Source: Macrostomum lignano
Taxonomy: Eukaryota
Length of the DNA stretch: 64,000 nucleotides
NCBI GenBank assembly: GCA_002269645.1
Contig: NIVC01001387.1
Location: forward strand, 128,136 to 192,135
Direction of reading: 5' to 3'
Shown here: piece after piece, positions 2,928-61,382 of the stretch
Layout: each line of letters begins with the position of its first letter
Position numbering within the stretch: the first letter of the stretch is position 1
Made by a program: the position numbers and the translations under genes
The notes under the pieces: generated by a model
Seen by the model: only the letters and a program-made list of their open reading frames with translations
The model's database searches: none
What the model was told of the DNA's origin: nothing

Positions 2928-3833
<906 letters not shown>

Positions 3834-5233: not shown

Positions 5234-5323
<90 letters not shown>

Positions 5324-13279: not shown

Positions 13280-14110
13280 TTGTCAGGATTCAAACTCGGG
13301 ACCTTAGTTGTTGAATTACGCAACTTTATCAAGACTCAACTATCAGGACAATATGAGTGAGGATTCGAACTCGGGACCTTAGTTGTTGAATTACGCAACT
13401 CCATCAAGACTCAACTATCAGGACAATATGAGTGAGGATTCGAACTCGGGACCTTAGTTGTTGAATTACGCAACTTTATCAAGACTCAACTATCAGGACA
13501 ATATGAGTGAGGATTCGAACTCGGGACCTTAGTTGTTGAATTACGCAACTCTATCAAGACTCAACTATCAAGGCAATATGAGTGAGGATTCGAACTCAGG
13601 ACCTTAGTTGTTAAATTAAGCAACTCTATCAAGACTCAACTATCAAGGCAATATGAGTGAGGATTCGAACTCGGGACCTTACTTTTTGAATTAAGCAAAT
13701 TTATCAAGACGTTAACTATCAGGACAGGATTCGAAGCCGGGACTTTTGTTTTTGATTTACGCAACTTTATCAAGACTCAACTATCAGGACAATATGAGTG
13801 AGGATTCGAACTCGGGACCTTAGTTGTTGAATTACGCAACTCTATCAAGACTCAACTATCAAGGCAATATGAGTGAGGATTCGAACTCAGGACCTTAGTT
13901 GTTAAATTAAGCAACTCTATCAAGACTCAACTATCAAGGCAATATGAGTGAGGATTCGAACTCGGGACCTTACTTTTTGAATTAAGCAAATTTATCAAGA
14001 CGTTAACTATCAGGACAGGATTCGAAGCCGGGACTTTTGTTTTTGATTTACGCAACTTTATCAAGACTCAACAATCAAGACAATATGAGTGAGCATTCTA
14101 ACCCGGGACC
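13280..14110 (-). repeat. 75-bp tandem repeat carrying tRNA-like A/B boxes, probable PSD 3' UTR
   Basis: GGATTCGAACTC recurs at 13361, 13436, 13511 and onward; minus strand shows GAGTTCGAATCC (B box). Confidence 0.9.
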
Positions 14111-23287: not shown

Positions 23288-24593
23288 CAAGGGTTGTTTG
23301 GAAAGTCCGCGATCAAACATGCTGCATTTTTTAAAACATGCATATCTTTTTTTGAGTCACTACTTTGTCTTGAAACTTTATACCATAGATAAATATCATA
23401 CCCTGAATGTTTTAAATCAAGAGTGGTCTTGTTTGGGCCAGGAATTTCCTTCTTGCAGTGCTTTTAGTCACACACAAATTCCATCACTATGCTGAAAAAC
23501 GAAGAAGCAAAGTGAAGTGTCATTTGGTTTTTGTGAAAACAAGGAAAGCAACAGGCAGAAATTCTTTGCAAGTTGCAAGCAATGTATGGCAAATGTGCAC
23601 CATCAAAAACAATGGTCAACAAGTGGGTGCAGCATTTTGTAGACAGCTGGGAGACAGTCAATGACCTTCCACGGAGTGGCCGGCCTGCCACCATGGTCAA
23701 CAGGTCAAACATTGAGCTTGAGCATTATGCTCTAGATGTTGACTGCCGAGCTACAGTGTGAGAGTTGTCAACCATTACTGGCATCTTATCAATGGCCATT
23801 CATTCAATCATGATGGTTGAGCTCGGTATGTCACGAGTTGTTGCTCATTGGGTCCCAAAACTTCTGACTGACCAGCAGCAGCAATAGCGGGTCCAGGTGT
23901 GTTGGCAGCTCCTCCAGTCATATTGCACTTATCCCAACTTTTTGGACCGGATTGTGACTGGGGATGAATCCTGGTTTCATTATAGTGAGCCAGAGTCCAA
24001 GATGCAGAGCAGTGTGTGGAAGGCCAGCCATGACTGCACCTTCAGCTGGCAAACAAATGACCACTGTCTTCTAGGACAAGGAGGGTATTCTGCTCATCGA
24101 ATGGCTTCCTCATGGTGCCACAATAAACAGTGAGTACTATATCCAAGTCCTGCAGAAGTTGTGTGAAGCCATCAAAGCCCAGCAGCATGGCAAGCTGAGC
24201 CGTGGCATCTTGCTTCAGCATGACAATGCCAGGCCGCATACCAGCCAGGCAACAATGGTTGCCATTTCAGACCTGGGCTTTAAGGTGCTGCCATACCCGC
24301 CCTACTTGCCAGACCTCGCACCCAATGACTTCTGGCTGTTTGGAGAGGTGAAAAAACCCTCTAAGGTTGCCAGTATAGCTCTCTACAGACCCTGGCATCA
24401 GCCATCAGCCAGTGGGTCAGGGGGTCACCTGCTGATTTCTATGCTACCGGCATCGAGAAGTTGCCTGAGAGGTGGCACAAGTGCATAAGCCTCAAGGGTG
24501 CCTACATTGAGAAGCAGGAAGAGTAGCATTACATTTGTTCAATCTATTAAACTGCTGGACATATTTGATTGCAGACTTTCTAAACAACCCTCA
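23288..24593 (+). mobile_element. Full-length but decayed mariner (DD34D) transposon, 1306 bp
   Basis: About 34-bp imperfect TIRs (CAAGGGTTGTTTGGAAAGTCCGCGATCAAACATG / CATATTTGATTGCAGACTTTCTAAACAACCCTCA); TA duplicated at 23286-23287 and 24594-24595. Confidence 0.95.
23489..24526 (+). pseudogene. Mariner transposase pseudogene
   Basis: Motifs SGRP, WVPKLL, TGDESW, HDNARPH and PDLAPNDFWLF, interrupted by several in-frame stops and frameshifts. Confidence 0.93.
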
Positions 24594-30429: not shown

Positions 30430-30607
<178 letters not shown>

Positions 30608-30665
30608 CAAAGACACAAAGACAGGCTGGCAGACAGAATAGGCACAGCTAAAGGTCAAAAGCAGC

Positions 30666-31163
30666 TCAGCTAGGCGCGTGATGCATCTGCTTGCTCCTGT
30701 TCAGCTTCATGTGACTGGCCACCAGTTCCTGATTGGCCAGAGCCGCTAGCAGGGAGATCTCGGCGCACAGGACGCCGGCGCAGATCACCTGTGCCAGACA
30801 GGCGGCCGGCTGGTCCTCCGGCAGGCCAACCAGCCGCAGGCAGGCCCGCTGAGTTGGCAGATGCGTGCCGCCGCCAACTACGCCAACCTCCAGACAGGGC
30901 ATGGTGACGCTGGCGTACAGATCTCCGCTGCCATCGTCCAATACTTCTAAACAGGTGATGGCCTGGCTGGCCTCAACCACCTGGGCCGGGTCCTGGCCGC
31001 AGGCGATGAACACGGCGGCTGCCAGGTTGGCTGCGTGGGCGTTGAATCCGCCGACTGTGCCAGCCAATGAGCTGCCCTCCAGATTTTTGGCTTGGTTCAA
31101 AGCCACCAGGCTGGCTGGTGAGACGCGAAGTGTCGATCGGACTAGAGACTCGGGTAGGCGAGT
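30666..31163 (-). CDS. HMGCR: HMG-CoA reductase last exon (KNL.GS, FNAHAAN, CGQD, GGGT, SHMKLNRS, stop)
   Basis: Catalytic Asp (CGQD), catalytic His and the AMPK-site Ser (HMKLNRS) are retained; TGA at 30666-30668. Confidence 0.96.
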   Translation of the reverse strand, partial: TRLPESLVRSTLRVSPASLVALNQAKNLEGSSLAGTVGGFNAHAANLAAAVFIACGQDPAQVVEASQAITCLEVLDDGSGDLYASVTMPCLEVGVVGGGTHLPTQRACLRLVGLPEDQPAACLAQVICAGVLCAEISLLAALANQELVASHMKLNRSKQMHHAPS

Positions 31164-31264
31164 CTGCGGTCAGTTAACGAGTTTATTAGTAATTTAAATT
31201 ATTGAAGTCTACTAATAGTAAAACATGAATCATTTAGGCTTTTCTGAATGTTTCCAAATGCCAA

Positions 31265-31715
31265 TTCACACCGGAAGTGAATTCCTAGAAATTGCGCACC
31301 GGTTGTTTTTAGGAATTTTGTATTTGATTTTCCTAGAAATGTCACAACGGAAGCTCTCAGAAGCCTCACACCGGAAATTCTTAGAAATATCACACCGGAA
31401 GTTTACAGAAATGTCACATCGGAAGTTTACAGAAATGTCACACCGGAAGTTTACAGGAATATCACACCGGAAGTTTACAGAAATGTCACACCGGAAGTTT
31501 ACAGGAATATCACACCGAAAGTTTACAGAAATGTCACATCGGAAGTTTACAGGAATATCACACCGGAAGTTTACAGGAATATCACACCGGAAGTACACAC
31601 AAATATCACACCGGAATTTCACACAAATATCACACCGGAAGTTTTTTACAGAACATTTCACAGGAAGCTATCAGGAATATCATACCGGAAGCTGTTAGAA
31701 AAATCACACCGGAAA
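31265..31715. repeat. 24-bp minisatellite (CACACCGGAAGTTTACAGAAATGT), HMGCR intron 4
   Basis: Tandem copies. Confidence 0.95.
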
Positions 31716-31770
31716 TTCCAAGAAAACCCCAAACCATATAAAGCCCCCCCCCTACCCAAACCGGACTCAC

Positions 31771-32028
31771 CTCGCACACAACGGACTTGCCCCTGCCCAA
31801 TATCCAATTGACAGCCGTTGGCTTCTTATCCGAGCAGGCGTTGCCGGACAGGCTGACTAGCCGGGCCTCTGGAAACCGGGACAGCAACGAGGAGACGGCG
31901 GCTTCGGCCCCCTTGGACAGCATGTTCATGCCCATTGCGTCGCCAGTCTCGGCGCAGTAGCGCAGATGAAGCCGACGGCCGGACAGAAAGCAGGCTAGCG
32001 AGCGTAGGCGGCAGTGACCCGAGGTGGC
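31771..32028 (-). CDS. HMGCR: HMG-CoA reductase exon 4 (TGDAMGMNMLSKG, SGNACSDKKP, GRGKSVVCE)
   Basis: NADPH-binding and DKK motifs; 258 nt; GTGAG donor. Confidence 0.96.
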
Positions 32029-32185
32029 CTGAGATGAAACAAATTTTTTCATAGATTTTTACCTCAGCAAGTTTCTAGTTTATAAGAACACCATCTGTAA
32101 TCTGTCCAAATTACAGTAAAAAGTCGTTTCATAAATCCCATATTCCTAGAAATAGCGTTTTTACCTTCCCTATTCTAAAAAACTA

Positions 32186-32855
32186 TAATAATAAGAGCAG
32201 ATGTGCAACCGACAGCTCAGCCGCAGCTATTGCGCGGCGCATCTGAAGGCTGCGTACGGCTGTTCAGTCCAAGGACTGGAGGGGGGTCGCCACACACAGC
32301 CTCAATTACACAGCTAATGCTGGCACCCATTTTACAGCTGGGTGAACTGAAGGGCCACAGCTACGTCTCTCTGACCCATCAGTGACCCACAACTACCATC
32401 ATCTCTCTGACCCATCAGTGACCCACAACTACCATCATCTCTCTGACCCATCAGTGACCCACAGCTACCATCATCTCTCTGACCCATCAGTTACCCACAG
32501 CTACCATTATCTCTCTGACCCATCAGTGACCCACAGCTACCATCATCTCTCTGACCCATCAGTTACCCACAGCTACCATTATCTCTCTGACCCATCAGTT
32601 ACCCACAGCTACCATCATCTCTCTGACCCATCAGTGACCCACAGCTACCATCATCTCTCTGACCCATCAGTGACCACAGCTACCATCATCTCTGACCCAT
32701 CAGTGACCCACTGCTACCATCATCTCTCTGAGCACTGAAGCAATGCAATGTTAAGTGTCTTGCTCAAGGACACAAATTGTTCCAGTCGGATCAGGAATCG
32801 AACCCCCAACCTTCAAGTCGTGTGTCCGACTCTCTAACCACTAGGCTACAACCCC
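32186..32855 (-). mobile_element. tRNA-derived CORE-SINE in HMGCR intron 3, interrupted by a minisatellite
   Basis: Box A TAGCCTAGTGG and box B GGTTCGATTCC; MIR/CORE-like block (plus strand CCCATTTTACAGCTGGGTGAACTGAAG...GTTAAGTGTCTTGCTCAAGGACACA); (TTA)n tail. Confidence 0.8.
32353..32733. repeat. 36-bp minisatellite (GACCCATCAGTGACCCACAGCTACCATCATCTCTCT) inside the SINE
   Basis: About 10 copies flanked by an ACTGAAG direct repeat. Confidence 0.95.
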
Positions 32856-33032
32856 ATAGTACGAAACAGCAACTCTCAACTTCTTAAACTTCTACATATT
32901 CCTAGAAAATACGGCAGCACTCTGGCGCAACGCATTCAACGGCATCGTCCCGCGACACCAACGCTCATACAGGGTGTACAGCGGTCCTTTGACTTTCTAA
33001 TTCTGTCAGGCATGTACATACTAGCTACAAAC

Positions 33033-33338
33033 CTCAAAGGCGCTGGCGGCCAGGGTCTGCCCGGCCTCGGATTCGGCAAACTGCATACACCGGACAGCCT
33101 GTACAGCGCTGGGAAACTCCAGCAATGGAGCCCTGGTCATGCCGTCCCGGTACACGCTGGCCCGACAGCCGCCTGCGGCTCTGAGAACTGCACAGCCGCG
33201 ATTCACCGAGGCCACCAGGCAGCCCTCCGTGGTGGCGAGAGGCAGCCGGTGCTCCATGCCGTTCACTAGCAGAGGCCCGACCAGGCCGAGTGGCAGCGTT
33301 GCCAAGCCGATCACCTCTTCGCAGCAGCGGCCGGTTAC
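33033..33338 (-). CDS. HMGCR: HMG-CoA reductase exon 3 (CCEEVIG, PLATTEGCLVAS, DGMTRAP)
   Basis: Class I HMGR motif containing the catalytic Glu (TTEG); canonical splice sites; 306 nt. Confidence 0.96.
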
Positions 33339-33431
33339 CTGAATTGAGTATATTTCAATATTAGATTGCTAATAAGTGCTTGCCTACTAACAAGTAGCCG
33401 GTAGAGAATGCAAAGGGATTAATACGCGAGG

Positions 33432-34270
33432 GGAATTTCGAGCTTTGGTGAATATTCGAGCTCTGGTGAAGATTCGAGCTTTGGTGAAGATTCGAGCTTT
33501 GGTGAAGATTCAAGCTTTGGTGAAGATTCGAGCTTTGGTGAAGATTCAAGCTTTGGTGAAGATTCGAGCTTTGGTAAAGATTCGAGCTCTGGTGAAGATT
33601 CGAGCTCTGGTGAAGATTCGAGTTTTGGTGGAGATTCGAGCTTTGGTGAAGATTCGAGCTTTGGTGAAGATTCAAGCTTTGGTGAAGATTCGAGCTTTGG
33701 TGAAGATTCAAGCTTTGGTGAAGATTCGAGCTTTGGTAAAGATTCGAGCTCTGGTGAAGATTCGAGCTCTGGTGAAGATTCGAGTTTTGGTGGAGATTCG
33801 AGCTTTGGTGAAGATTCGAGCTTTGGTGAAGATTCAAGCTTTGGTGAAGATTCGAGCTTTGGTAAAGATTCGAGCTCTGGTGAAGATTCGAGCTTTGGTG
33901 AAGATTCGAGTTTTGGTGGAGATTCGAGCTTTGGTGAAGATTCGAGCTTTGGTGAAGATTCAAGCTTTGGTGAAGATTCAAGCTTTGGTGAAGATTCGAG
34001 CTTTGGTGAAGATTCGAGTTTTGGTGAAGATTCGAGCTTTGGTGAAGATTCGAGCCTTGGTGAAGATTCGAGCTTTGGTGAAGATTCGAGCCTTGGTGAA
34101 GATTCAAGCTTTGGTGAAGATTCGAGCTTTGGTGAAGATTCGAGTTTTGGTGAAGATTCGAGCTTTGGTGAAGATTCGAGCCTAATTGAAGATTCGAGCT
34201 TTGGTGAAGATTCGAGCTTCGGTGAAGATTCGAGCTTTGGTGAAGATTCGAGCTTCGGTGAAGATTCAAG
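33432..34270. repeat. 18-bp minisatellite (TTCGAGCTTTGGTGAAGA), HMGCR intron 2
   Basis: About 46 copies. Confidence 0.97.
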
Positions 34271-34413
34271 CTCACACAGAGAAGGAAACAGGAACAGCGT
34301 TTTATAGAACAAAAACAGCTTCATAAAATTTCGAGCACACCTTGAACCAGACAAGCACACTTGCTTCAATTTGAAATTTAGTGCTAAAAAACACTAAAAA
34401 AACGGTAGCCCAC

Positions 34414-35460
34414 CTGTTTCCAATCGTAGTCCTGAAATGGTATGTGCGTCAACACGGTGCCAGCAGACACCAGGGTGCCAGCCAGGTGCAGCCGGCGTAG
34501 CTCCACAGCCCGATTCGGGCAGCCAGTCAGGCCCTCCAACTGTCGGGGCTTCACGTGTCCGGCCTGCATCAAGTTCAGATAGTCGGCGTTACTAAGGCAA
34601 CCGGCAACGGATCCACCGTCTCGACGTAGAAGCTGAAGCGCCTCCTCTAGAGAGCGCTGGCGCTGAGCGGGAGCTGGAGCAGGCGCCGACAGCTGCTGGC
34701 GCAATTGAGTCTGGCGCGAGAATGGCGCCAAGCCACTGGAGGACGATTCCGAAAGAACCCGTTTGCGCCACTGCACCGGCTCTCTTGTTTCACCATTCGC
34801 GTCGCTTTCGCCGCCTCTGGCGCCAATACTGACATCGCCAGCTGCGCCAATTAATTTGGCGCCAACTTTGTCGGCGCCAATATTAGCATCGGCGCTATTA
34901 TCTATGGCGGCGCGAACTTTGACGGCGCCACCATCAGCTTTGGCGCTAAAAATAGCACCACAATCGCCGGAATCAGGCTGAGAAGCAGCTGGATGCTGTT
35001 CGCAGACGGCAAATTGAATGCACAAATAGATGCAATAGGGCAATGCTAGGCACAGATCCCAAGCAGGAGAAGCCAGCCAAGAGCACAGGCGGCCAATAAG
35101 ATTGTCACTACCAGCGGAAGAGGCCGCGCCTCCGCCTAGCGACTGCAACAGCAGCACCCCGGCAACCATCATGGCTTTGATCTCCTGCTTCCTACTGCCA
35201 TAGTATTGATAGTAGTAACTGGCAGCGGCGTCTACGAATTTCGGCCGCATGCCTGGCGGCCCGCTGCTGGCCAACCTGACCAGATAGCCGGGTAGCAGGA
35301 CAAGGTGCAAGCAGGCGCAGGTAATTAACGTCAGGGCCATTGTGTGACAAACTTGGCGCAGTTCGGGAGATAGATTGGCCGCCACTCGGCCGCCAATAAA
35401 AAATCCGGCACCTTTGATAGCGTAGCCAGTTGCCATGGAGAGGACTGGACCGGCGATTGC
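34414..35460 (-). CDS. HMGCR: HMG-CoA reductase exon 2 (sterol-sensing-like helices, linker, start of catalytic domain)
   Basis: AIAGPVLS resembles AILGPTFT; LEGLTGCPNRAVELRR...IPFQDYDW matches the catalytic N-domain; 1047 nt in frame. Confidence 0.88.
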
Positions 35461-35564
35461 CTGTCAATCAGTTAATTAAAAAATAAATTACTGCATGTAA
35501 ATAAATATGGTGAAATAAAAGTACAATACGCACTTTCAGTTGATGACTTCTTAATGTATATCTA

Positions 35565-37110
35565 GGAGAGAGACCGCGGAGTCATAGAGTGGCCAATGTA
35601 CATCAAAGGTAGAGAGAAACTGCGGAGTCATAGAGTGGCCAATGTACATCAAAGGGAGAGAGAGAAACTGCAGAGTCATAGAGTGGCCAATGTACATCAA
35701 AGGGAGAGAAACTGTGGAGTCATAGAGTGGCCAATGTACATCAAAGGGAGAGAAACTGTGGAGTCATAGAGTGGCCAATGTACATCAAAGGGAGAGAGAG
35801 AAACTGCGGAGTCAAAGAGTGGCCAATGTACATCAAAGTGGAGAGAGAGAGAAACTGCGGAGTCAGAGTGGCCAATGTACATCAAAGGGAGAGAAACCGC
35901 GGAGTCATAGAGTGGCCAATGTACATCAAAGGGAGAGAAACTGCGGAGTCATAGAGTGGCCAATGTACATCAAAGGGAGAGAAACTGCGGAGTCATAGAG
36001 TGGCCAATGTACATCAAAGGGAGAGAGAGAAACTGCGAAGTCATAGAGTGGCCAATGTACATCAAAGTACATCAATGTACATTAAAAAATAAATTACTGC
36101 ATGTAAATAAATATGGTTGAATAAAAGTACCAAACGCTTTTTCAGTTGATGACTTCTTAATGTATATCTAGGAGAGAGAGACCGCGGAGTCATAGAGTAG
36201 CCAATGTACATCAAAGGGAGAGAGAGAAACTGCAGAGTCAAAGAGTGGCCAATGTACATCAAAGGGAGAGAAACCGCGGAGTCATAGAGTGGCCAATGTA
36301 CATCAAAGGGAGAGAAACCGCGGAGTCATAGAGTGGCCGATGTACATCAAAGGGAGAGAAACTGTGGAGTCATAGAGTGGCCAATGTACATCAAAGGGAG
36401 AGAGAGAACTGCGGAGTCAAAGAGTGGCCAATGTACATCAAAGGGAGAGAGAGAAACTGCGGAGTCAGAGTGGCCAATGTACATCAAAGGGAGAGAAACT
36501 GTGGAGTCATAGAGTGGCCAATGTACATCAAAGGGAGAGAAACTGTGGAGTCATAGAGTGGCCAATGTACATCAAAGGGAGAGAGAGAAACTGCGGAGTC
36601 AAAGAGTGGCCAATGTACATCAAAGGGAGAGAGAGAAACTGCGGAGTCAAAGAGTGGCCAATGTACATCAAAGTGGAGAGAGAGAGAAACTGCGGAGTCA
36701 GAGTGGCCAATGTACATCAAAGGGAGAGAAACCGCGGAGTCATAGAGTGGCCAATGTACATCAAAGGGAGAGAAACCGTGGAGTCATAGAGTGGCCAATG
36801 TACATCAAAGGGAGAGAGAGAAACTGCGGAGTCAAAGAGTGGCCAATGTACATCAAAGGGAGAGAGAGAAACCGCGGAGTCATAGAGTGGCCAATGTACA
36901 TCAAAGGGAGAGAGAGAAACTGCAGAGTCATAGAGTGGCCAATGTACATCAAAGGGAGAGAGAGGAACCGCGGAGTCATAGAGTGGCCAATGTACATCAA
37001 AGGGAGAGAGAGAAACTGCAGAGTCATAGAGTGGCCAATGTACATCAAAGGGAGAGAGAGAAACTGCAGAGTCATAGAGTGGCCAATGTACATCAAAGGG
37101 AGAGAGAGGG
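35565..37110. repeat. About 40-bp minisatellite (GAGTCATAGAGTGGCCAATGTACATCAAAGGGAGAGAAACTGCG), HMGCR intron 1
   Basis: Two blocks separated by a duplicated unique spacer of about 95 bp. Confidence 0.96.
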
Positions 37111-37143
37111 AGTCCCAAACTCGGCAATAATCAAGCAACGAAC

Positions 37144-37737
37144 CTTATCTAATCGACTATAACCTGAATCCTTGTCCTCAGCATCAGCAGTTCCAACAGC
37201 TGCGGCAGAAGCGGCAGCCCGAAACAAACAATTCAAATCCAACAGTAGCACATAATAGGCCGCTAGCTCAGTCGGTCTACACAAATAATTCGAATTAGAC
37301 GATTCAGTAGAACTGCTGTTATTAATCCAAGGCAAGGCCAGACGCAGGCAGAACAGCGGACAGCAGGCCATCGTCAAAACAGCCGCCGGGCCAATCCAAC
37401 GATTGGCGCCCAGCCGACTCAGCCGACAACAGGCCTCATATAAGCGAGCCAGAGCAATGAGCTTTAAACAGCCAACAAGGAACATCTTTGCGGCATCTGC
37501 GGAGTCGTCAGATTTAGCAGCAATCAAACTGGTTGAGCTGGCCACGCTGAATAAAAAAGCTGCTAGGCAGATGAGCGCCAAGATAGAACCCACCCGCGTC
37601 AGTTCTGAGGCGTGTCGGCGCCAAAATGGACCGGCGCGACGCGCTAAAATTATTGAGAAAGCGCTGACGCGATCATCCCTATGATTGGTTGATGTCTGCG
37701 CTGCCGGCTGATTTATCGGCGATGCGAATTTAAGCAT
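37144..37737 (-). CDS. HMGCR: HMG-CoA reductase exon 1 (divergent membrane domain)
   Basis: Hydrophobic open frame from ATG 37737 to GT donor at 37143; 594 nt, phase 0 joins exon 2. Confidence 0.72.
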
Positions 37738-37964
37738 AGCTGTGTCCTGTGCCACAGTGCGTCCGTTGATAATATCTGCTGCAAATGGGATTCAAAATGA
37801 ATAGTCACGGCAATCTGCATGGCTTAAAGCCCTAACGAACTATCTATCTAGATTAGATAGATGATAGTTAGATAGATAGACAGACAGACAGACAGACGGT
37901 TAGATAGATAGATAGATAGTAGATAGCGAGAAAGAGCGAGCGAAGCGAGCTCTTTCGAGCTTGC

Positions 37965-38387: not shown

Positions 38388-39190
38388 AGATTCCCCTATA
38401 TACTGTCTATATGAAGTCACAAAATTGTAGCTGCCAAGCGCGTCAAGGGTTACCAAGCGCGTCAGCCAAGTGCGTCGACTAGATTTTGGATTTCCCTCGC
38501 CTAATAGGATTTCCCTAGCCCATAGACCATAGAATATATGAACATCTATCACGCAGCACTATCGTGACAGATTTCCCCTATGCACATATACAAGCCATAG
38601 AGTGGTTGACGCGTTTGGCTGACGCGTTTGGCTGACGCGTTTGGCTGACGCGCTTGGCTGACGCGTTTGGCTGACGCGCTTGGCTGACGCGTTTGGCTGA
38701 CGCGCTTGGTTGACGCGCTTGGCTGACGCGTTTGGCTGACGCGCTTGGTTGACGCGTTTGGCTGGCGCGTTTGGCTGACGCGTTTGGCTGACGCGCTTGG
38801 CTGACGCGCTTGGCTGACGCGTTTGGCTGACGCGCTTGGCTGACGCGTTTGGCTGACGCGCTTGGCTGACGCGTTTGGCTGACGCGTTTGGCTGACGCGC
38901 TTGGCTGACGCGTTTGGCTGACGCGCTTGGCTGACGCGCTTGGCTGACGCGCTTGGCTGACGCGTTTGGCTGACGCGTTTGGCTGACGCGCTTGGCTGAC
39001 GCGTTTGGCTGACGCGCTTGGCTGACGCGCTTGGCTGACGCGTTTGGCTGACGCACTTGGCTGACGCGTTTGGCTGACGCACTTGGCTGACGCACTTGGC
39101 TGACGCGTTTGGTTGACGCGTTTGGCTGACGCACTTGGCTGACGCGTTTGGTTGACGCGTTTGGCTGACGCACTTGGCTGACGCGTTTGG
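38245..39190. repeat. (GATA)n (38245-38385) and 13-bp minisatellite TTGGCTGACGCG(T/C) (38600-39190) upstream of HMGCR
   Basis: Directly visible. Confidence 0.95.
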
Positions 39191-39350
39191 TCCATATATT
39201 AGATATTAGACAAGCAAATTAGACATAAAACTATGTAATGCGTGTTTCGTCGGTTTTATTAAATTGACAGACTATCAGATAATCTTTCTCTCCCTCTCTT
39301 GCATCTTCGCTGTCTTTTTATCGACTCATCTTTATGCTATAATCTTCGCC

Positions 39351-39890
39351 GGCGTCAATTAGGGTTAGGGTTACGTTAGGGTTAGGGCTAGCGTCAATTA
39401 GGGTTAGGGTTAGGGTTAGGGCTAGCGTCAATTAGGGTTAGGGTTAGAGCTAGCGTCAATTAGGGTTAGGGTTAAGTTAGGGTTAGGGCTGGCGTCAATT
39501 AGGGTTAGGGTTAGGGTTAGTGTTTGGGCTAGCGTCGATTAGGGTTAGGGTTACGTTAGGGTTAGGGCTGGCGTCAATTAGGGTTAGGGTTACGTTAGGG
39601 TTAGGGCTGGCGTCAATTAGGGTTAGGGTTAAGTTAGGGTTAGGGCTAGCGGCAATTAGGGTTAGGGTTAAGTTAGGGTTAGGGCTGGCGTCAATTAGGG
39701 TTAGGGTTAAGTTAGGGTTAGGGCTAGCGTCAATTAGGGTTAGGGTTAAGTTAGGGTTAGGGCTGTCGTCAATTAGGGTTAGGGTTAAGTTAGGGTTAGG
39801 GCTAGCGTCAATTAGGGTTAGGGTTAAGTTAGGGTTAGGGCTAGCGTCAATTAGGGTTAGGGTTAAGTTAGGGTTAGGGTTAGGGTTTGG
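39351..39890 (+). repeat. 39-bp telomere-variant array (GCTAGCGTCAA TTAGGG TTAGGG TTAAG TTAGGG TTAGG)
   Basis: About 14 units; a second, shorter array lies at 40904-41068. Confidence 0.95.
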
Positions 39891-41895
39891 TTAGGCTGGC
39901 TACTATCAGATAAGCTACCCTTAGACAGCAACAGGCGTTTCCCCAGATAAGTGATTCAAAACAGCAGCATACGTTTCATTAGTCGAAATGAAATAAAAAG
40001 TATTTTTTTAGCGCGAAAATTTTCTAAGTCAAAATAATTTTGACACTTAGAGAAATTTCACATTTCTCGGCGAGCGCAGCGGTCCCCCAGAATTAAACTA
40101 GGGTGTGACAGGTAAGTGGTTAAGGTTAGGGTTGTGAATAATTATTCAAGTAATAGGTAGGTAGATTGGGTGGGTTGGTTGGTTAGTTAGTTAGTCAGTT
40201 AGTCAATCGGTATGCTATATGAGTACTACTACTACTACTAGTGTTTATTGTTTAGCCAGTCAGCCAGTCAGCCATCGAACAAGATTTAGCTCTCCATTCG
40301 TTATTGTGTGTCTATTTATAGATGGTTTTTTACTATATGTAGCCGACTAATATATATTTATAGATGGTTTTTTACTATATATAGCCGCGGTTAGTCTATT
40401 TATTTCGTATTTATTACTATAAATAGCGTTTATGTTACTAAGTTTAAATGTTGTTACTAAAAATATAATTGCATACTCGTCCCTAAGAGATATAGACCTT
40501 ACACTCGCTAATATTCACTAGTTGTCTATGGGTCTAACCTATCGTATATATCATCAATCTCTATATCTCTTAGGGACGAGTATGCAATTATATTTTTAGT
40601 AACAACATTTATACTTAGTAACATAAACGCTATTTATAGTAATAAATACGAAATAAATAGACCAACTGCGGCTATATATAGTATAAAACCATCTATAAAT
40701 ATATAGTAGTCGGCTATATATAGTAAAAAACCATCTATAAATATGATAATGACGATGATGACGACGATGACGATGCTGACGATGACCGTTTGTACTGTCT
40801 ATTTATAGTAACATAAACGCTATTTATAGTAACAATACCCTACCCCTAACAATACCCTAACAATACCCTAGTTTTTTTCTGGGGACCGCTGCGCTTGCCG
40901 AGATATTAGGGTTAGGGTTAAGTTAGGGTTAGGGCTGGCGTCAATTAGGGTTAGGGTTAGGTTAGGGTTAGGGCTGGCGTCAATTAGGGTTAGGGTTAAG
41001 TTAGGGTTAGGGCTAGCGTCAATTAGGGTTAGGGTTAAGTTAGGGTTAGGGTTATTGTTAGGGTTAGGGCTGGCTACTCTCAGATAAGCTACACTCAGAC
41101 AGCAACAGGCGTTTCCCCAGATAAGTTATTCAAAACAGCAGCATACGTTTTATTAGACGAAATGAAATAAAAAAATTTTATGCGAAAATTTTTCTAAGTC
41201 AAAATAATTTTGACACTTAGAGAAATTTCACATTTCTCGGCCAGCGCAGCGGTCCCCCAGAAAAAAAAGAGGCTGTGACAGGTAAGTGGTTGGGTTTGGT
41301 GTTGTGAATAATGATAGTAGTAGGTAGATAAGCTGAGCTGAGCTTATCGCGCACTACTCTAATCTGTCTGTCTGTTATTAAGAAATCTTAATAAATTACT
41401 AAATATAGATGGTTACTATTTTGGGTATCAAATTGTTACCATAAATAGAATGTCATACTGCCCCTAAGAGATATAGAGATATAGTACTCATTTTAATGCC
41501 ATAGACACTCGTAGGTCTATATCTCTTAGGGGCAGTATGACATTCTATTTATGGTAACAATTTGATACCCAAAATAGTAACCATCTATATTTAGTAATTT
41601 ATTAAGATTTCCACTAGTGCCCATGCTGTATTTAAGTTATAACTTAACTAATTACACTAGTATCTTACACACGCACACACGCACACACACGCACGCACAT
41701 TTTTTTCTGGGGGACCGCTGCGCTCGCTCGGGTTAGCAAAATTATATAATTCTACCCTCCCCTCTCAATCAGCCCTCACTAACCCTAAACCTAACCCTAA
41801 CTCTAACAACAAACAAATTTTTTTCTGGGAAACTCTGTATGTGAATACTTTTATCCTGGGGAAGCCACCTGTTGCTGTCTGAGGGTAACTTATCT
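39351..41895. mobile_element. Two tandem telomere-repeat-bearing foldback modules of unknown family
   Basis: TTAGGG-variant arrays; duplicated about 200-bp core (39894-40093, 41067-41268); nested inverted repeats and long hairpins. Confidence 0.55.
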
Positions 41896-42469
41896 TGGGG
41901 GAAGCCACTCTCCCGATGCTTTCCTCTCCTCTCCATGCCATGGGCCGCTGCAATTCAAAATCACACCCGCCTATTTGTTTCTTCTATTCGTTTGTGACCG
42001 CGATTAAGAAAGTACAAGTTAAACTGTATGGGTTATAATATAGCATGCTGTTTGTACACACTCTAAACTCCCTTCTGGCTGAATACTCATTCTACTGCCC
42101 CTTTTTGCCATAGAATAAAAATTTGAAGTCTCCCTATCGATTTATCACTCTCGATACGTTGTTGCAGCCATAGACATAGATTGAGGCCGACCTGTCCATC
42201 TCGATGTTTTAAACCCTGACCATTTCGCTCTTGCTCAGTTGTAAGTAGAGCGGCGTCTTGCGCCCGGCTCCCTCGCTTGCCCTCTCTAGTATAGATAAGC
42301 ATAGCTACTACGTCCACCTTTCGCGTTTCTATCAAGTAAGTTGCAACTGTGCTTTTTTTATATGTTTTATTATATCACGAGTGGAGCTACGCCTTTGAAG
42401 GTGAAATAGTACGAACTCTCATCCTGGAACTTCTGAAGCGGAAGAACTCCCATTCACTTTTATAATCAT

Positions 42470-42870
42470 GTCAAAATTGCATTTTCACTATATGTAACAG
42501 GTCCCTTACATGCTGCATGTTTAGGTGGAGCAGCCTCTCTCTCTCTCTCTCGGATATGCTATAGCCCTTAACTACTATTGTTTCACAATTGCATTTTCAC
42601 TATATGTAACAGGTCCCTTACATGCTGCATGTCTAGGTGGAGCAGCCTCTCTCTCTCTCTCTCTCGGATATGCTATAGCCCTTAACTACTATTGTTTCAC
42701 AATTGCATTTTCACTATATGTAACAGGTCCCTTACATGCTGCATGTCTAGGTGGAGCAGCCTCTCGGGTATGCTATAACCCTTTAATTATTATTATTTCA
42801 CATTTGCACTATCACTATATATAACAGGTCCCTTACATGCTGCATGTTTAGGTGGAGCAATATGCTATAG
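42470..42870. repeat. About 112-bp tandem repeat with a variable (CT)n
   Basis: AATTGCATTTTCACTATATGTAACAGGTCCC recurs at about 42476, 42587 and 42702. Confidence 0.9.
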
Positions 42871-46654: not shown

Positions 46655-46698
46655 CTGCGGACAGGAGCGTGGGAAATCATGAATTAGCGGTTGCAGAA

Positions 46699-46950
<252 letters not shown>

Positions 46951-47235: not shown

Positions 47236-47295
47236 CTGAGGGAGTTGGAACTTGCTGCTAGATACTTGGTCCCTGTGACCCGCAGCTGCATTGAC

Positions 47296-47612
47296 TCTGA
47301 CCCATCAGTGACCCACGCCTACCATCTCTCTGACCCATTAATGACCCACACACACCATCTCTCTGACCCACTAATGACCCACACACACCATCTCTCTGAC
47401 ATATCAGTGACCCACATACCATCTCTCCGACCCATTAGTGACCCACACCTACCATCTTTCTGACCCATCAGTGACCCACACCTACCATCTCTCTGACTCA
47501 TCAGTGACCCACGCCTACTATCTCTCTGACCCATCAGTAACCCACACCTACCATCTCTCTGACCCAATAATGACCCAAGCTACCATCTCTCTGACCCATC
47601 AGTGACCCACGG
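47296..47612. repeat. 33-bp minisatellite (GACCCATCAGTGACCCACACCTACCATCTCTCT), PSMD13 intron 4; same family as 32353-32733
   Basis: The unit differs from the 36-bp unit mainly by a 3-bp indel. Confidence 0.93.
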
Positions 47613-51155: not shown

Positions 51156-53920
51156 CTGTAAAAAATTATGAAATATGATTAAATTGTAGCAGTTGTAATA
51201 TATCGCATAGCATGAAATATTTATAAATTTGATATTGGACCATGCCTTCTTTGATCTAATCTAAGTAGACTAGAAATACTCCGGACCAGTCTAGATTGTT
51301 GCTTATGCCAAAAAGTATCAATAAGTATTAGTAAGTATCAAGCTTATTTCTACAATGTTGTACAGTAGGGTGTCTGTCCGCACATTTTTCATTTCTAGAC
51401 TCTAAGTTTTTCCAGGTTTACTATGACCAAATGAATAAAGCAAATAAAGAAGTCACCCAGTGTTTGCCACTATCAAAGAAGGCAAGATTGCAAACAATTC
51501 AATAGGCTTTTGTTATCTAATCTTTTTTGGAACCAACTAAAAAGTAGGCTATTGTTTTCATAAAAACTCTTAATAAGCATTAAAGATTTTGTTACTTTGG
51601 TTACTTAAACATTACAAGATATGTAGGAGGGAAAGGGAAGATAAGAACATTAAAGAAAGGGAGAGAGAGAGAAGGGGATAAAAAACGAGAGGCAAGAGGA
51701 GAGAGGGAAAAGAAGAGAGGGGAAATAAGAAAGGGAAGAAAGGAAAAAAGAGAGAAGCAAAGGGAGGAAAAAAGAAGAGAAATGATAAAAAAAAGAAAGG
51801 AAAGAAAGAAGATGAAAAGAAAAGAGGAAAAGAGGAAAGAGAAGCCTATTGCAACCAAAGGCCATTATTGCAGACAATGACTAGCACAAATTGGCCTTCA
51901 ATATTGGCAGGTACAGTTTGGCATGGTGATGGGGTTTTGGCGCATGAAAGGGGAGTGTTTGGTGCAATTTAGACCTTGGCTGCAATAGGGAAAGAGAAGG
52001 AAAAAGAAGAGAAAATAGTCAAAAGATGATAAGTTAATAGATATAAAGCTATGCTTTATGCAATAAGGATATTATAGCATTGTGACTTTCCAAATTGCAA
52101 CTTGAAACCAGGCCTTGGATAAAATTTTCCATTTTAGTGCCAGCAAAAACATCAAGCCAGGTTTTTTACACTTCTAATTCAATAGAATTACTATATAACA
52201 TTTTGACTCTTCATATCATATCTAAGTCTTAGATATCTTAGACTAAGATTGGACTTTTTAGATAAGATTTTGTATTTTGGCATTAGCATTGAATATAGCT
52301 CATAGTGTACATTTTTCCTAAATGCATTTTTGCAACTAATTACTAATAGCAAGGAGTCCCAATGGCAATGCTATATCTATGATATTCTTACTAAGTACTA
52401 TTGGCTAATAGCATATTGTAACCATAGCAAAAAGCTAGGCAATGCTTATCCCTGTAGTACCATAAGAATAATTTGTCTTGTTCCTATAATACTATAGGAA
52501 TAATTTTTTGCTTAACTGTATAGCACACTAATGAGATAGCTGCCCTATCTTCTCCATACTCCAGATCATGTAATAAAAATCAACCAAATTATTTGCCAAA
52601 AATGGTCCATTATGCAATTCAAAAAAGTAATTTATTATATCCACATAAAAAGTCATTTATTGTCAATGTCACAACACTGGTGTAGTTTTGATAATGGGTG
52701 TGCACGCAATTTTTTGGCATGCATTTGTAATTATTCAATTTTTCTTCGGGTGTGCACTTAGCATGATTTGGACTATTGTATTTTCCATACAAGTGCAACA
52801 GTCGGCCGAGTTGGCCAATCCGGCCAACTGATTTGGTGGCCAACCAAGGAAGTTGCAAAAATGCCCACTCAAAAAACACACAAGTAGTAGTACTAAATAG
52901 CTGACGAGGCATTTTGGCTTAATAAGACAGTCATAGTTACTCCTGCCGTTTACCCAAAGTTGCGGTAATTTTGCTATAGAGTTTTTTACATGTAAGTCAT
53001 ATTTTTAGCCAAAAACTACATCGCATTTTTGTTAAAACTAAGTCGTACGGCCGACCGAATTTTGGAGGTTGCACATGTATGGTATCTTCTATATGGTTTC
53101 TATTTTTTTATTCTATAATATAAAACAAATGTTCAAGTAAAGTTATATTGTTGTACTGCAATGAAACTACAATTAAAAAACTGTAAACTATTCCTTACAG
53201 TATCTGTAGAAAGAGAGGATAGTCATTGTGATATATAGATAAGACATTAATTATTGGACTTTTTGAACTTTAGGTAATAGGTACATAAATTACTTCCAAT
53301 TTTCTGATTTTTCTGAAACTTTTGCCAGAGTATTAGAGGCTATCCAAAATGATATTAAAGCAAAAAACTGCAAAAAAAAACTTTTAGAGTTAACAAGAGC
53401 TTAATTTGTTAATCCCCATGTAATTAGTGATAATTTGATGCAAGCACTTTTGGAGAATTGTATATTTAAAAATTAAAACTTTTTTTAGAATCATGACTTA
53501 ATGTAAAATGTAAAATGTAAATATTTTTTCACAATTTAATGAACTTATTTTAAAAGAACATTTAGAGGGTTAGAATTTTAACTCCAATAAAAAGAGTGTC
53601 GATTGTAATTCTTCTTCACCAGTTTGCTATAATGCAACAAGAATGCCACTTTTAAATTGGTGTTTTTAAAAAATGCTAACCCACAGTTTACTACCACTTT
53701 CATCTCCCACTTTTGATTTGCTATCATTCTCTCATGATTGTGACTAGCTATACATTTTTACTTGTTTACCTATAGTCATTTCTACTAATCTGCATTGTTT
53801 ATCTATTCTAAAGGTAACTACAGCTGTTGATATCAATTAGTTTGATGGGATTATATTTTTTCTCCATGGAGGTATTTGATAACTTGCTGAATTTTTAATT
53901 TAAGCTTCATTACAATTCTC

Positions 53921-54230
53921 CCCTGGACCCCCTCAGTCTCCAAATTTATCTACCTAATCTACAATAGACGCCCATGCTTTTATTGAAGTTTAGGTACATA
54001 AAATCAATCCTTATGAAGATTCTCCATATCATAAAACCCCTCATTCCCTATGCCATAGTAGTTGGTAGTTGTCAACCACCCCCCCTTGCCCCCTTGACAT
54101 CAGCCTCCAAATTTATCTACCTAATCTTTAATAGACCTCCATGTCTCTATTGAAGTTTAGGTATATAAAATCATTCCCTATAAAGATTCTTTGTATCCTA
54201 AAAACCCCCATTTCCCATGCCCTAGTAGTT
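53921..54230. repeat. Two tandem copies of a 130-170-bp dispersed repeat, with an inverted copy at 57566-57691
   Basis: CTCCAAATTTATCTACCTAATCT...TATTGAAGTTTAGGTA occurs twice here and reverse-complemented near 57.6 kb. Confidence 0.85.
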
Positions 54231-57565: not shown

Positions 57566-57691
57566 TAAGGGGTTTTGGGGTAGGGAGAATCTAATTCATA
57601 GGGATTGATTTTATGTACCTAAACTTCAATAGAGACATTGGGGTCTATTGTAGATTAGGTAGATAAATTTGGAGACTGAGGGCGTCCAGGG
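57566..57691. repeat. Inverted copy of the 53921-54050 repeat
   Basis: Direct reverse-complement match by eye. Confidence 0.85.
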
Positions 57692-61274: not shown

Positions 61275-61316
61275 TCTCAGTGTCTTTCTCAGTGTCTGTC
61301 TCAGTGTCTGTCTCAG

Positions 61317-61381
<65 letters not shown>

Positions 61382-61382
61382 G
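61275..61382. repeat. (TGTC)n microsatellite
   Basis: Directly visible. Confidence 0.9.

What the first reader, a model, noticed from the sequence alone, without database searches (positions are those of the whole stretch)
39351..41895. Telomere-repeat-bearing nested foldback modules of no recognised family
Seen: two head-to-tail modules share one order. Each has a TTAGGG-variant array, a conserved core of about 200 bp, GCGCAGCGGTCCCCCAGAA (40074; 41244), low-complexity DNA, a long hairpin, low-complexity DNA, and the inverted TTCTGGGG(G)ACCGCTGCGC (40877; about 41704). Module 2 continues with a CCCTAA tract and an inverted about 55-bp copy of the core start (41838-41895 versus 41082-41138), giving three nested levels of inverted repeat. 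There is no ORF. Inference: a non-autonomous element that carries telomeric repeats near its ends, analogous in concept to ciliate telomere-bearing elements or foldback elements. It could recruit telomere proteins, seed new telomeres or excise as a linear hairpin molecule.
Basis: partly seen in the sequence, partly recalled or inferred. Interest (0 to 1): 0.7.

Follow-up and report, generated by a model that had tools for sequence, protein, structure and literature searches.

The report
Foldback repeat embedded in telomere-like tracts
Upstream of the HMG-CoA reductase gene of a Macrostomum flatworm lies a real but non-coding 2.6-kb cluster of a hairpin-containing repeat unit, two full copies and one partial, separated by telomere-like repeats; it looks like telomere-associated repeat DNA multiplied by recombination, and nothing shows that it is a transposon carrying telomeres at its tips.

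Summary
Two head-to-tail units (U1 39894-40906, U2 41068-41727) share a 93%-identical core of about 270 bp. Each has a 19-nt motif that recurs inverted, and a long near-perfect hairpin (184-nt and 96-nt arms). Each is preceded by a 39-bp TTAGGG-based minisatellite. A third copy, inverted and internally deleted (41751-41907), supplies the "outer" inverted repeat and the CCCTAA tract. There is no ORF, no Rfam match, no other copy in the window, and no relative in any collection I could reach. The host is a Macrostomum flatworm; the cluster lies between PSMD13 and HMG-CoA reductase.

The telomere tracts flank U1 on both sides in the same orientation, as does the 7-nt GGGTTAG after U2. Overall polarity points inward, the opposite of a free telomere. 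No target-site duplication or terminal inverted repeats define U1 or U2.

Best reading (about 0.5): a block of telomere-associated repeat units. Each is an old fold-back duplication capped by telomere-type repeats. The units multiplied by exchange between flanking tracts, and the hairpin arms are kept identical by gene conversion. The main rival (about 0.3) is a non-autonomous mobile element that targets telomere repeats. A genome-wide copy census would decide between them.

The parts
39352..39893 (+). Array 1: 14 units of the 39-bp minisatellite CT(A/G)GCGTCAA-(TTAGGG)2-TTAAG-(TTAGGG)2, ending in degenerate TTAGGG repeats that abut the core.
39894..40906 (+). Unit U1 (whole): core, G/T-rich tract, hairpin 1, C-rich tract, inverted 19-nt motif.
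39895..40165 (+). Core 1. It contains c1 (39895-39964, with two AGATAAG motifs), the 19-nt motif c2 at 40074-40092, the sequence AATTAAA where the other copies have an A-run, and a conserved CAG|GTAAGT at 40109-40117.
40313..40743 (.). Hairpin 1: 184-nt arms, 97% complementary, 63-nt loop. Both arms carry 2.2 copies of a 42-bp sub-repeat. The tip reads CCCTAAGAGATATAGA / TCTATATCTCTTAGGG.
40836..40906 (-). Right arm of U1: a C-rich telomere-like tract (CAATACCCTAA repeats), T7, and the inverted c2 (about 35 nt, one-base deletion). It ends ...GCCGAGATA directly against TTAGGG.
   Evidence: (I21)
40905..41067 (+). Array 2: 3.8 units of the same 39-bp minisatellite, in the same orientation as array 1.
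41068..41727 (+). Unit U2 (whole).
41069..41327 (+). Core 2. It contains c1 at 41070-41138, c2 at 41244-41262, an A8 run, and CAG|GTAAGT at 41279-41287.
41382..41611 (.). Hairpin 2: 96-nt arms, 100% complementary, 38-nt loop. The inner 46 nt are 87% identical to the tip of hairpin 1; the rest is not alignable.
41694..41727 (-). Right end of U2: T7 plus the inverted c2 (exact 19-mer, about 28-nt inverted repeat), preceded by a (CACACG)n tract.
   Evidence: (I11)
41728..41750 (.). Junction between U2 and U3: GGGTTAG (telomere-type, + polarity) followed by a 12-bp AT palindrome, AATTATATAATT.
41751..41907 (-). U3: an inverted, internally deleted copy. Read on the minus strand it runs c1 (41907-41835), then a deletion of about 110 nt between two CAGCRG microhomologies, then a c2-like CAGAGTTTCCCAG, A7, and a G-rich telomere-like tract (41807-41771 on the plus strand). 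Homology stops exactly at the TGGCT that begins the core in U1 and U2.
   Evidence: (I4, I5, D4)

Best explanation
The cluster is a block of telomere-associated repeat DNA, not a transposon with telomeres at its tips. Its building block is a discrete non-coding unit U of 0.66-1.0 kb. U begins (C)TGGCTAC... and ends ...CTGCGCTYGC. It sits inside TTAGGG-type tracts in one fixed polarity.

**Shown**
- Three copies share the same left boundary.
- Both full copies abut telomere-type sequence at both ends, in the same orientation.
- Each full unit is an imperfect palindrome: c2, an A-rich heptamer or A-run, a G/T-rich tract, a hairpin, a C/A-rich tract, T7, and c2 inverted.
- The right arm breaks off about 30-35 nt into the core and is joined directly to TTAGGG.

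**Inferred history**
1. An ancestral segment next to telomere-like repeats underwent a fold-back (inverted) duplication. The truncated arm was capped by, or joined to, telomere-type repeats, as in inverted-duplication/terminal-deletion healing.
2. The resulting [telomere tract + U] module was duplicated in tandem by unequal exchange or break-induced copying between the flanking telomere-like tracts. This is how yeast Y' units multiply.
3. A further partial copy was laid down in inverted orientation.
4. Since then the low-complexity stretches have turned over by slippage. Arm-to-arm gene conversion has kept each hairpin 97-100% self-complementary even though the two hairpins diverged from each other.
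5. The 39-bp minisatellite spacer CTGGCGTCAA matches the first 10 nt of the core (CTGGCTACTA) at 7 of 10 positions. The array probably grew from the junction between the telomere tract and U.

No function is implied. The unit may act as a fragile palindromic site flanked by correctly oriented telomere seeds.
For: **Discrete unit**
- Homology of the inverted copy ends at TGGCT, the same nucleotide where arrays 1 and 2 meet the cores.
- The right arms of U1 and U2 end within about 4 nt of each other. Each is followed by TTAGGG-type sequence on the + strand: array 2 after U1, GGGTTAG after U2.

**Orientation**
- Both arrays have the same orientation.

**Palindrome architecture**
- All five c2 copies are followed by A7-8 (AATTAAA in one) and then tracts with 60-74% G+T, against 50% for the window.
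- Folding z-scores are -26 and -29.

**Divergence pattern**
- The cores are 93% identical while the interiors cannot be aligned, apart from the hairpin tip (87% over 46 nt) and c2.
- Each hairpin's own arms are 97-100% complementary, and the 42-bp sub-repeat is present symmetrically in both arms of hairpin 1. This fits arm-to-arm conversion, as established for large palindromes such as those of the human Y chromosome.

**No transposon signatures**
- No ORF.
- No homologues.
- No target-site duplication in the flanks read.
- The flanks are unrelated to the element.
- No ribozyme or known RNA family.

**Host context**
- The host genome is known to be about 15% simple and tandem repeats (PMC5730564).
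- Its telomere repeat is TTAGGG (PMC5068713).
Against: - Only one locus could be examined, so whether a dispersed family exists is unknown.
- Uniform neutral decay of a simple tandem duplication would not by itself leave a 93%-identical core next to interiors that cannot be aligned. I attribute this to slippage in low-complexity DNA, but selection or independent insertions of different family members would explain it equally well.
- A sharply shared terminus in three copies, plus telomere repeats at both ends of each full unit, is also what a target-specific mobile element produces.
- The locus is not at a chromosome end in this window. Genes lie on both sides. FISH saw no interstitial telomeric sites in M. 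lignano, though 0.5 kb is probably too short for FISH to detect.
- The fold-back-plus-healing step is inferred from anatomy alone.
Confidence: 0.5

Rival explanations
1. U is a non-autonomous mobile element that inserts specifically into telomere-type repeats, or is primed on them, in a fixed orientation. Known examples of this behaviour are SART/TRAS LINEs, Athena-type Penelope-like elements and the telomere-targeting Helitrons of Paramecium. On this reading U1 and U2 are insertions or a tandem pair, U3 is a truncated inverted copy sharing the invariant terminus, and the 10-nt spacers of the 39-bp array are extreme stubs of that terminus.
For: - One terminus (TGGCTAC...) is shared by U1, U2 and U3, and at 7 of 10 positions by the 18 array spacers.
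- Telomere-type sequence lies on both sides of each full unit in the same polarity.
- c2 followed by A7-8 and then TTAGGG-like sequence resembles a SART-type 3' junction.
- Two direct copies plus an adjoining inverted truncated copy is the typical Penelope-like layout (my own knowledge of that family).
- The conserved core next to hypervariable interiors is typical of non-autonomous families.
- Paramecium Helitrons show the same pattern of telomere repeats before and after each copy (PMC13085455).
Against: - There is no reverse transcriptase, endonuclease, Rep/helicase or transposase anywhere near the cluster. The only transposase in the window is an unrelated mariner remnant at 23.5-24.5 kb.
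- No hammerhead ribozyme.
- The A-run has a fixed length and lies inside U, not at its end.
- No Helitron termini and no target-site duplication.
- A 96-184-bp perfect hairpin is an awkward template for reverse transcription.
- No second locus was found in any collection I could search. Those collections do not hold this genome, so this is weak evidence.
Confidence: 0.3
2. The cluster is the scar of an end-to-end chromosome fusion, or of an internalised chromosome end. U units would be subtelomeric repeats of two former ends that meet head-to-head at 41728-41810, where GGGTTAG faces a CCCTAA-like tract. The genus is known for chromosome fusions after whole-genome duplication.
For: - The polarity is inward, TTAGGG on the left and CCCTAA on the right, with U copies in opposite orientation on the two sides.
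- Tandem [telomere tract + unit] modules resemble Y'-type subtelomeres.
- Macrostomum karyotypes evolved by fusions, with loss of telomeric clusters (PMC5704211 and PMC10733133).
Against: - The CCCTAA tract is explained equally well as the internal G-rich tract that follows every c2 copy.
- The prior for any one window containing one of a handful of fusion points is very low.
- Ordinary housekeeping genes lie within 2-5 kb on both sides, all on the same strand.
- No interstitial telomeric sites were seen by FISH.
Confidence: 0.07
3. The two units are paralogous non-coding RNA genes. The core would be a promoter plus a first exon ending at CAG|GTAAGT, and the downstream long hairpins would be precursors of endogenous siRNAs (hpRNA-type).
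For: - A perfect 5' splice-site consensus is conserved in both cores on the + strand.
- The hairpins differ in sequence between units but each remains perfectly self-complementary.
- A sub-threshold, hairpin-shaped Rfam match to a miRNA model has E = 0.03.
Against: - No expression data are available.
- 100% DNA-level complementarity without G-U pairs points to DNA conversion rather than selection on RNA structure.
- The arms match no other sequence in the window, so no target is evident.
- The Rfam score of 27.6 is far below the gathering score of 81.
Confidence: 0.06
4. The tandem and hairpin structure is an assembly artefact of long-read assembly in a repeat-rich, partly duplicated genome.
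For: The source genus is notoriously hard to assemble (PMC5730564). Hairpin 2 has perfectly identical arms.
Against: - U1 and U2 differ by 7-12% in the core and have different interiors, so they are not a duplicated consensus.
- Both hairpins have unique loops and homologous but diverged tips.
- Missed-adapter chimeras give kilobase-scale palindromes at read ends, not nested 100-200-bp arms.
Confidence: 0.03

Closest known systems
Foldback-type transposons (Drosophila FB, Galileo; sea-urchin TU elements)
   Same: Non-coding. Long inverted arms containing tandem sub-repeats (42-bp units in both arms of hairpin 1). Nested inverted repeats. Large length variation between copies, with conserved outer and inner parts.
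   Different: In FB-type elements the inverted repeats are the termini, and insertions are flanked by 7-9-bp target duplications. Here the two ends of U1 and U2 are not inverted repeats of each other, the hairpin is central, no target duplication is seen, and dispersal is unproven.
Subtelomeric tandem units separated by internal telomere tracts (yeast Y' elements; Chlamydomonas Sultan arrays)
   Same: Head-to-tail units, each bounded by short telomere-type tracts in a single polarity. Amplification by recombination between those tracts is the accepted mechanism for Y'.
   Different: This cluster is interstitial, with genes on both sides. The units are small, non-coding and palindromic. The telomere tract is a 39-bp higher-order variant. 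An inverted partial unit follows the two direct ones.
Telomere-repeat-specific mobile elements (Bombyx SART1/TRAS1; rotifer Athena Penelope-like elements; Paramecium telomere-capping Helitrons, PMC13085455)
   Same: Copies lie within telomere repeats in a fixed orientation, so internal telomere tracts of one polarity separate head-to-tail copies. The c2-A7-TTAGGG-like junction resembles the SART junction of poly(A) followed by TTAGG.
   Different: No reverse transcriptase, endonuclease or Rep-helicase gene. No hammerhead ribozyme. No Helitron termini. The A-run is internal and of fixed length. The central perfect hairpin has no counterpart in those families.
Ciliate telomere-bearing elements (Oxytricha TBE1, Tetrahymena Tel-1)
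   Same: Germline-internal telomere-type repeats lie next to a conserved element sequence.
   Different: In the ciliate elements the telomere repeats are the extreme inverted termini, with the polarity of a free telomere (C-strand 5' at each end), and the elements encode transposases and have target duplications. Here the tracts around a unit are direct repeats, the overall polarity is inward, and nothing is encoded.
Inverted-duplication/terminal-deletion rearrangements healed by telomere addition (fold-back inversions, breakage-fusion-bridge products)
   Same: The order is sequence, short spacer, inverted copy of the sequence truncated at a breakpoint, then (TTAGGG)n pointing outward. This is exactly the order c2...hairpin...c2' then array 2.
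   Different: Those products are usually large and terminal. Here the structure is sub-kilobase, interstitial and present as two diverged copies, so it would have to be an old event that was later duplicated.

Membership tests
Foldback (FB/Galileo-type) DNA transposons | Long inverted repeats that constitute the two termini of the element | tested here: not met
   U1 and U2 start with c1 (TGGCTAC...) and end with the inverted c2. The inverted repeats (c2/c2' and the hairpin) are internal. Only the composite U2+U3 has c1/c1' at its ends (88% over about 70 nt).
Foldback (FB/Galileo-type) DNA transposons | Tandem sub-repeats inside the inverted arms | tested here: met
   A 42-bp unit occurs 2.2 times in each arm of hairpin 1 (D5/D6). 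Hairpin 2 has none.
Foldback (FB/Galileo-type) DNA transposons | Target-site duplication of 7-9 bp | tested here: not met
   The flanks at 39351/41908, 39894/41908, 41069/41908 and around both hairpins share no direct repeat (sequence).
Foldback (FB/Galileo-type) DNA transposons | Dispersed multicopy family | not testable with these tools
   There is no other copy in the 64-kb window. The source genome is in none of the searchable collections.
Ciliate-type telomere-bearing elements (TBE1/Tel-1) | Telomere repeats as extreme inverted termini with free-telomere polarity | tested here: not met
   Arrays 1 and 2 are direct repeats on both sides of U1. The G-strand is on + at the left and the C-strand at the right, which is inward polarity.
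Ciliate-type telomere-bearing elements (TBE1/Tel-1) | Encoded transposase | tested here: not met
   No ORF with any homologue.
Telomere-specific non-LTR retrotransposons and their SINEs (SART/TRAS type) | Insertion within telomere repeats in one fixed orientation | tested here: met
   Both full units have TTAGGG-type sequence of + polarity on both sides. With only two units, this could equally be a tandem duplicate.
Telomere-specific non-LTR retrotransposons and their SINEs (SART/TRAS type) | Poly(A) tail at the 3' junction with the target repeats | tested here: inconclusive
   A7-8 (AATTAAA in one copy) follows all five c2 copies and is followed by G/T-rich tracts, telomere-like in three of them. 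However, the run has a fixed length and lies inside U, not at either end of U.
Telomere-specific non-LTR retrotransposons and their SINEs (SART/TRAS type) | RT/APE-encoding partner sharing the 3' end | not testable with these tools
   None is in the window.
Penelope-like elements (including endonuclease-deficient, telomere-attached Athena type) | Hammerhead ribozyme in the repeat (pseudo-LTR) | tested here: not met
   Rfam found none at the gathering threshold or at E<=5. No CUGANGA...GAAA motif occurs in 39.2-42.1 kb.
Penelope-like elements (including endonuclease-deficient, telomere-attached Athena type) | Partial tandem with an adjoining inverted truncated copy | tested here: met
   U1 and U2 are direct and U3 is inverted and truncated, all sharing the c1 terminus. 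This is a resemblance in layout only.
Helitron / Helentron non-autonomous elements | 5'-TC and 3'-CTRR termini (or short asymmetric terminal inverted repeats), a short subterminal 3' hairpin, and insertion at AT or TT without duplication | tested here: not met
   The ends read (C)TGGCTAC... and ...GCCGAGATA or ...GCTCGCTCGG. No short GC-rich hairpin lies within 20 nt of either end. The junctions are GGG|CTGG and ATA|TTAGGG.
Subtelomeric repeat units (Y'-type) | Tandem units separated by telomere-repeat tracts of telomere polarity | tested here: met
   The order is array 1, U1, array 2, U2, GGGTTAG.
Subtelomeric repeat units (Y'-type) | Location next to chromosome ends | tested here: not met
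   In this window the cluster lies between PSMD13 (46.4-49.2 kb) and HMG-CoA reductase (30.7-37.8 kb), with further genes beyond. Whether other copies sit at chromosome ends could not be tested.
Known structured RNA families (miRNA/hpRNA, snRNA, SL RNA, ribozymes) | Match to a curated covariance model or to the published Macrostomum spliced leader | tested here: not met
   No Rfam hit at gathering score; the best sub-threshold hit is 27.6 bits against a cut-off of 81. The SL sequence is absent from the window (sequence from PMC8629364).

The most novel reading that the evidence does not exclude
U is the first telomere-repeat-specific mobile element described in a flatworm, and of a new structural kind. 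It would be a non-coding unit with one invariant terminus that always abuts the C-strand of TTAGGG repeats. It would carry a self-renewing central foldback, and leave 10-nt terminal stubs that seeded the 39-bp telomere-variant minisatellite. Such a family would create interstitial, inward-facing telomere seeds flanking fragile palindromes. That is a ready substrate for the chromosome breakage, healing and fusion for which Macrostomum karyotypes are known.
Probability: 0.18. Interest if true: 0.7.

Novelty: new variant of a known kind. Interest (0 to 1): 0.38.

Why it matters
Interstitial telomere-type repeats and palindromes are both known hot spots for breakage and rearrangement. Here the two occur together, nested and in more than one copy, 1.6 kb upstream of an essential metabolic gene, in a genus whose chromosomes fuse and rearrange unusually fast.

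If the unit proves to be a family tied to telomere repeats, whether mobile or subtelomeric, it would give a concrete sequence handle on two questions:
- how chromosome ends are built in flatworms;
- how internal telomere seeds arise.

If it proves to be a single-locus rearrangement, it is an ordinary by-product of a genome that is about 15% tandem repeats.

Tried and rejected
**Searches for other copies**
1. Self-blast of 39200-42100 against the window found nothing outside the cluster. All-against-all blast found only shared simple repeats and minisatellites.
2. Exact scans of public DNA gave the following:
   - The 19-mer had 0 hits in viral contigs.
   - It had 2 hits in metagenome contigs, both chance matches limited to the 19-22 nt.
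   - The c1 29-mer had 0 hits in prokaryotic genomes.
   - A 30-mer from the array unit (GCGTCAA plus telomeric repeats) had 0 hits in viral contigs.
3. I translated the only two open frames of the array and core and used them as protein queries, hoping that gene callers had annotated other copies. There were no hits. The exhaustive HMMER search returned only unrelated low-complexity proteins.
4. I tried to fetch the orthologous locus through the only homologue found, the M. lignano UniRef protein P0001 (88% identity). It is not on record.

**Searches for known RNA features**
5. Rfam at the gathering threshold and at E<=5 found no family. ARAGORN found no tRNA.
6. A hammerhead motif scan found none in the region. 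The Macrostomum spliced-leader sequence is absent.

**Other tests**
7. Flip-flop orientation of the two hairpin loops rests on only a 9-nt match, p about 0.04, and is not convincing.
8. The flanks 39191-39351 and 41908-42470 show no similarity to the element or to each other above shuffled controls, so there are no further decayed copies and no duplicated target.
9. The bacterial promoter/terminator scan is not meaningful for this eukaryote.
10. A literature search for the sequence motifs, and for foldback or telomere-bearing elements in flatworms, found nothing describing this unit.
11. Repbase and Dfam comparison could not be done because they are not among the tools.
Full report
**Context**

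The window is eukaryotic and extremely rich in minisatellites; TRF reports 60 rows. An exon of HMG-CoA reductase is 88% identical to a Macrostomum lignano UniRef protein, the only hit in 5.8 billion clusters. The source is therefore a Macrostomum flatworm: either a species close to M. lignano or a diverged paralogue.

Pfam confirms the genes, all on the minus strand:
- a Sec7-PH gene at 17.5-20.3 kb;
- HMG-CoA reductase at 30.7-37.8 kb;
- PSMD13 at 46.4-49.2 kb.

The finding lies in the 8-kb intergenic stretch between PSMD13 and HMG-CoA reductase. It is 1.6-4 kb upstream of the first coding exon of the reductase. TTAGGG is the telomere repeat of this genus (PMC5068713). About 15% of the M. lignano genome is simple or tandem repeats (PMC5730564).

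Yes.

- *Arrays.* They are a 39-bp higher-order unit, CT(A/G)GCGTCAA-(TTAGGG)2-TTAAG-(TTAGGG)2. There are 14 copies at 39352-39883 and 3.8 copies at 40905-41051. All 38 TTAGGG dimers of the window are here, against 0.01 expected.
- *Cores.* They align from the array boundary for about 270 bp (39895-40165 versus 41069-41327), at 93% identity over aligned columns.
- *19-mer.* It occurs four times, twice on each strand, against 0.01 expected.
- *Hairpins.* The arms are 184 nt at 97% and 96 nt at 100%. They are the only long inverted repeats in 64 kb. The units bounded by the 19-mer fold as nested foldbacks with z-scores of -29 and -26.
- *Coding.* No ORF longer than 124 aa exists. The long frames are translations of the array.

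**Anatomy, refined**

I call the unit U. It starts at (C)TGGCTAC, which begins segment c1. About 180 nt further on it carries the 19-nt motif c2.

In all five copies of c2, on either strand, the motif is followed by seven or eight A (AATTAAA in one copy). Then comes a G/T-rich tract, 60-74% G+T against 50% for the window. In three of the five copies that tract contains TTAGGG motifs.

The interior continues with low-complexity DNA, the hairpin and more low-complexity DNA. It then mirrors the start: a C/A-rich tract, T7 and the inverted c2. The right arm stops about 30-35 nt beyond the A-run, within about 4 nt of the same position in both units. There it abuts TTAGGG-type sequence of plus polarity: array 2 after U1 and GGGTTAG after U2.

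It consists of:
- c1, 88% identical over about 70 nt;
- a deletion of about 110 nt between two CAGCRG microhomologies;
- a degenerate c2;
- A7;
- a G-rich telomere-like tract.

That last tract, read on the plus strand, is the CCCTAA tract at 41771-41807. U3's homology ends exactly at the TGGCT where the arrays meet the cores of U1 and U2.

The overall layout is array 1 | U1 | array 2 | U2 | GGGTTAG | 16-nt spacer containing a 12-bp AT palindrome | U3 inverted. The flanks outside 39352-41907 are unrelated to the element and to each other.

**What the pattern means**

1. *Telomere tracts are not inverted termini.* They flank U1 on both sides in the same orientation, and U2 has array 2 on its left and the 7-nt GGGTTAG on its right.
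2. *Overall polarity points inward.* The G-strand is on the left and the C-strand on the right. That is the reverse of a free linear molecule and of ciliate telomere-bearing elements. It is the polarity expected at a telomere-telomere junction, or at a break whose two sides could each be healed.
3. *Divergence is very uneven.* The core is 93% identical, the hairpin tip 87% over 46 nt, and c2 is exact, yet the rest cannot be aligned. Each hairpin remains 97-100% self-complementary, and hairpin 1 carries the same 42-bp sub-repeat in both arms. Arm-to-arm gene conversion in palindromes is established knowledge and explains the self-complementarity. Slippage in low-complexity DNA plausibly explains the rest.
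4. *The array spacer resembles the start of U.* The 10-nt spacer CTGGCGTCAA matches the first 10 nt of U (CTGGCTACTA) at 7 positions, including the first five. The minisatellite probably grew from the junction between the telomere tract and U.

**Best explanation (about 0.5)**

The cluster is a block of telomere-associated repeat units multiplied at the DNA level.

The order c2...hairpin...c2', truncated and followed by outward-pointing TTAGGG, is that of a fold-back inverted duplication whose broken arm was capped by or joined to telomere-type repeats. The [tract + U] module was then duplicated in tandem through the flanking telomere-like tracts, as Y' units are in yeast. A partial inverted copy was added later. 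These historical steps are inferred. The shared boundaries, the orientation and the palindrome architecture are shown.

**Rivals**

- *Telomere-repeat-targeting non-autonomous mobile element (about 0.3).* It explains the invariant terminus, the telomere tracts at both ends and the conserved core equally well. It is reminiscent of SART/TRAS, Athena and the Paramecium telomere Helitrons. Against it, every specific membership test I could run failed or was inconclusive:
  - no reverse transcriptase, endonuclease, Rep or transposase gene;
  - no hammerhead ribozyme;
  - no Helitron ends;
  - no target duplication;
  - an A-run that is internal and of fixed length.
- *Fusion scar (about 0.07).* It fits the polarity and the genus's history of fusions. 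It has a very low prior, and the CCCTAA tract has a simpler explanation.
- *hpRNA-type gene pair (about 0.06).* It is suggested by a conserved perfect 5' splice-site consensus, CAG|GTAAGT, in both cores. There is no other support.
- *Assembly artefact (about 0.03).* It is unlikely because the copies are diverged and the loops are unique.

**Limits**

The source genome is in none of the collections available to me. DNA pattern scans, three protein searches, the exhaustive representative search and a contig look-up all failed to retrieve any related locus. Repbase and Dfam were not available. The key question is whether U is a dispersed family, a subtelomeric family or a one-off. It is therefore open, and it could be answered by a single genome-wide blast.

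**Verdict**

It is not a telomere-bearing transposon in the ciliate sense. It is a new variant among telomere-associated or foldback repeats, and mobility is unproven. Interest is moderate.

Noticed in passing
window 23537-24485 (+): A frameshifted remnant of a mariner-type transposase. It has a DDE domain fragment (Pfam Transposase_1, E = 5e-10) plus upstream HTH-like frames. It lies in a low-GC stretch, is unrelated to the finding, and is the only transposase signal seen in the window.
   Followed up: partly
window 53920-54017, 54100-54184 and 57595-57692: A roughly 100-nt repeat is present twice in direct orientation and once inverted, 91-93% identical. It brackets about 3.4 kb of low-GC DNA whose ORFs have no Pfam match. 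It may be the ends of a decayed DNA transposon.
   Followed up: partly
window 13285-14110: A 75-nt tandem unit (11 copies, with a higher-order period of 291) contains GGATTCGAACTC, which resembles the complement of a tRNA T-arm. ARAGORN finds no tRNA. It may be a tandemly amplified tRNA-derived SINE fragment.
   Followed up: no
window 963-2481 / 6053-6744; 32366-32731 / 47295-47610; (GTCT)n at 2928-3833, 5128-5322, 30431-30637, 46694-46950, 61281-61382: The same minisatellite families recur at distant sites, including introns of different genes (HMG-CoA reductase and PSMD13), at 83-98% identity. This suggests that minisatellites are dispersed in this genome by some carrier or mechanism.
   Followed up: no
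window 30669-37791 (-): The HMG-CoA reductase gene is split by introns that consist almost entirely of minisatellite arrays with periods of 18, 24/48, 36 and 44/48 bp. Several arrays are open in multiple frames, producing long spurious ORFs.
   Followed up: partly
window 38603-39190: A 13-bp minisatellite (TGGCTGACGCGTT, 45 copies) ends 160 bp before the telomere-variant array. Its TGGCTGAC resembles the TGGCTAC start of the core and the CTGGCG of the array spacer. I did not test whether this similarity is meaningful.
   Followed up: no
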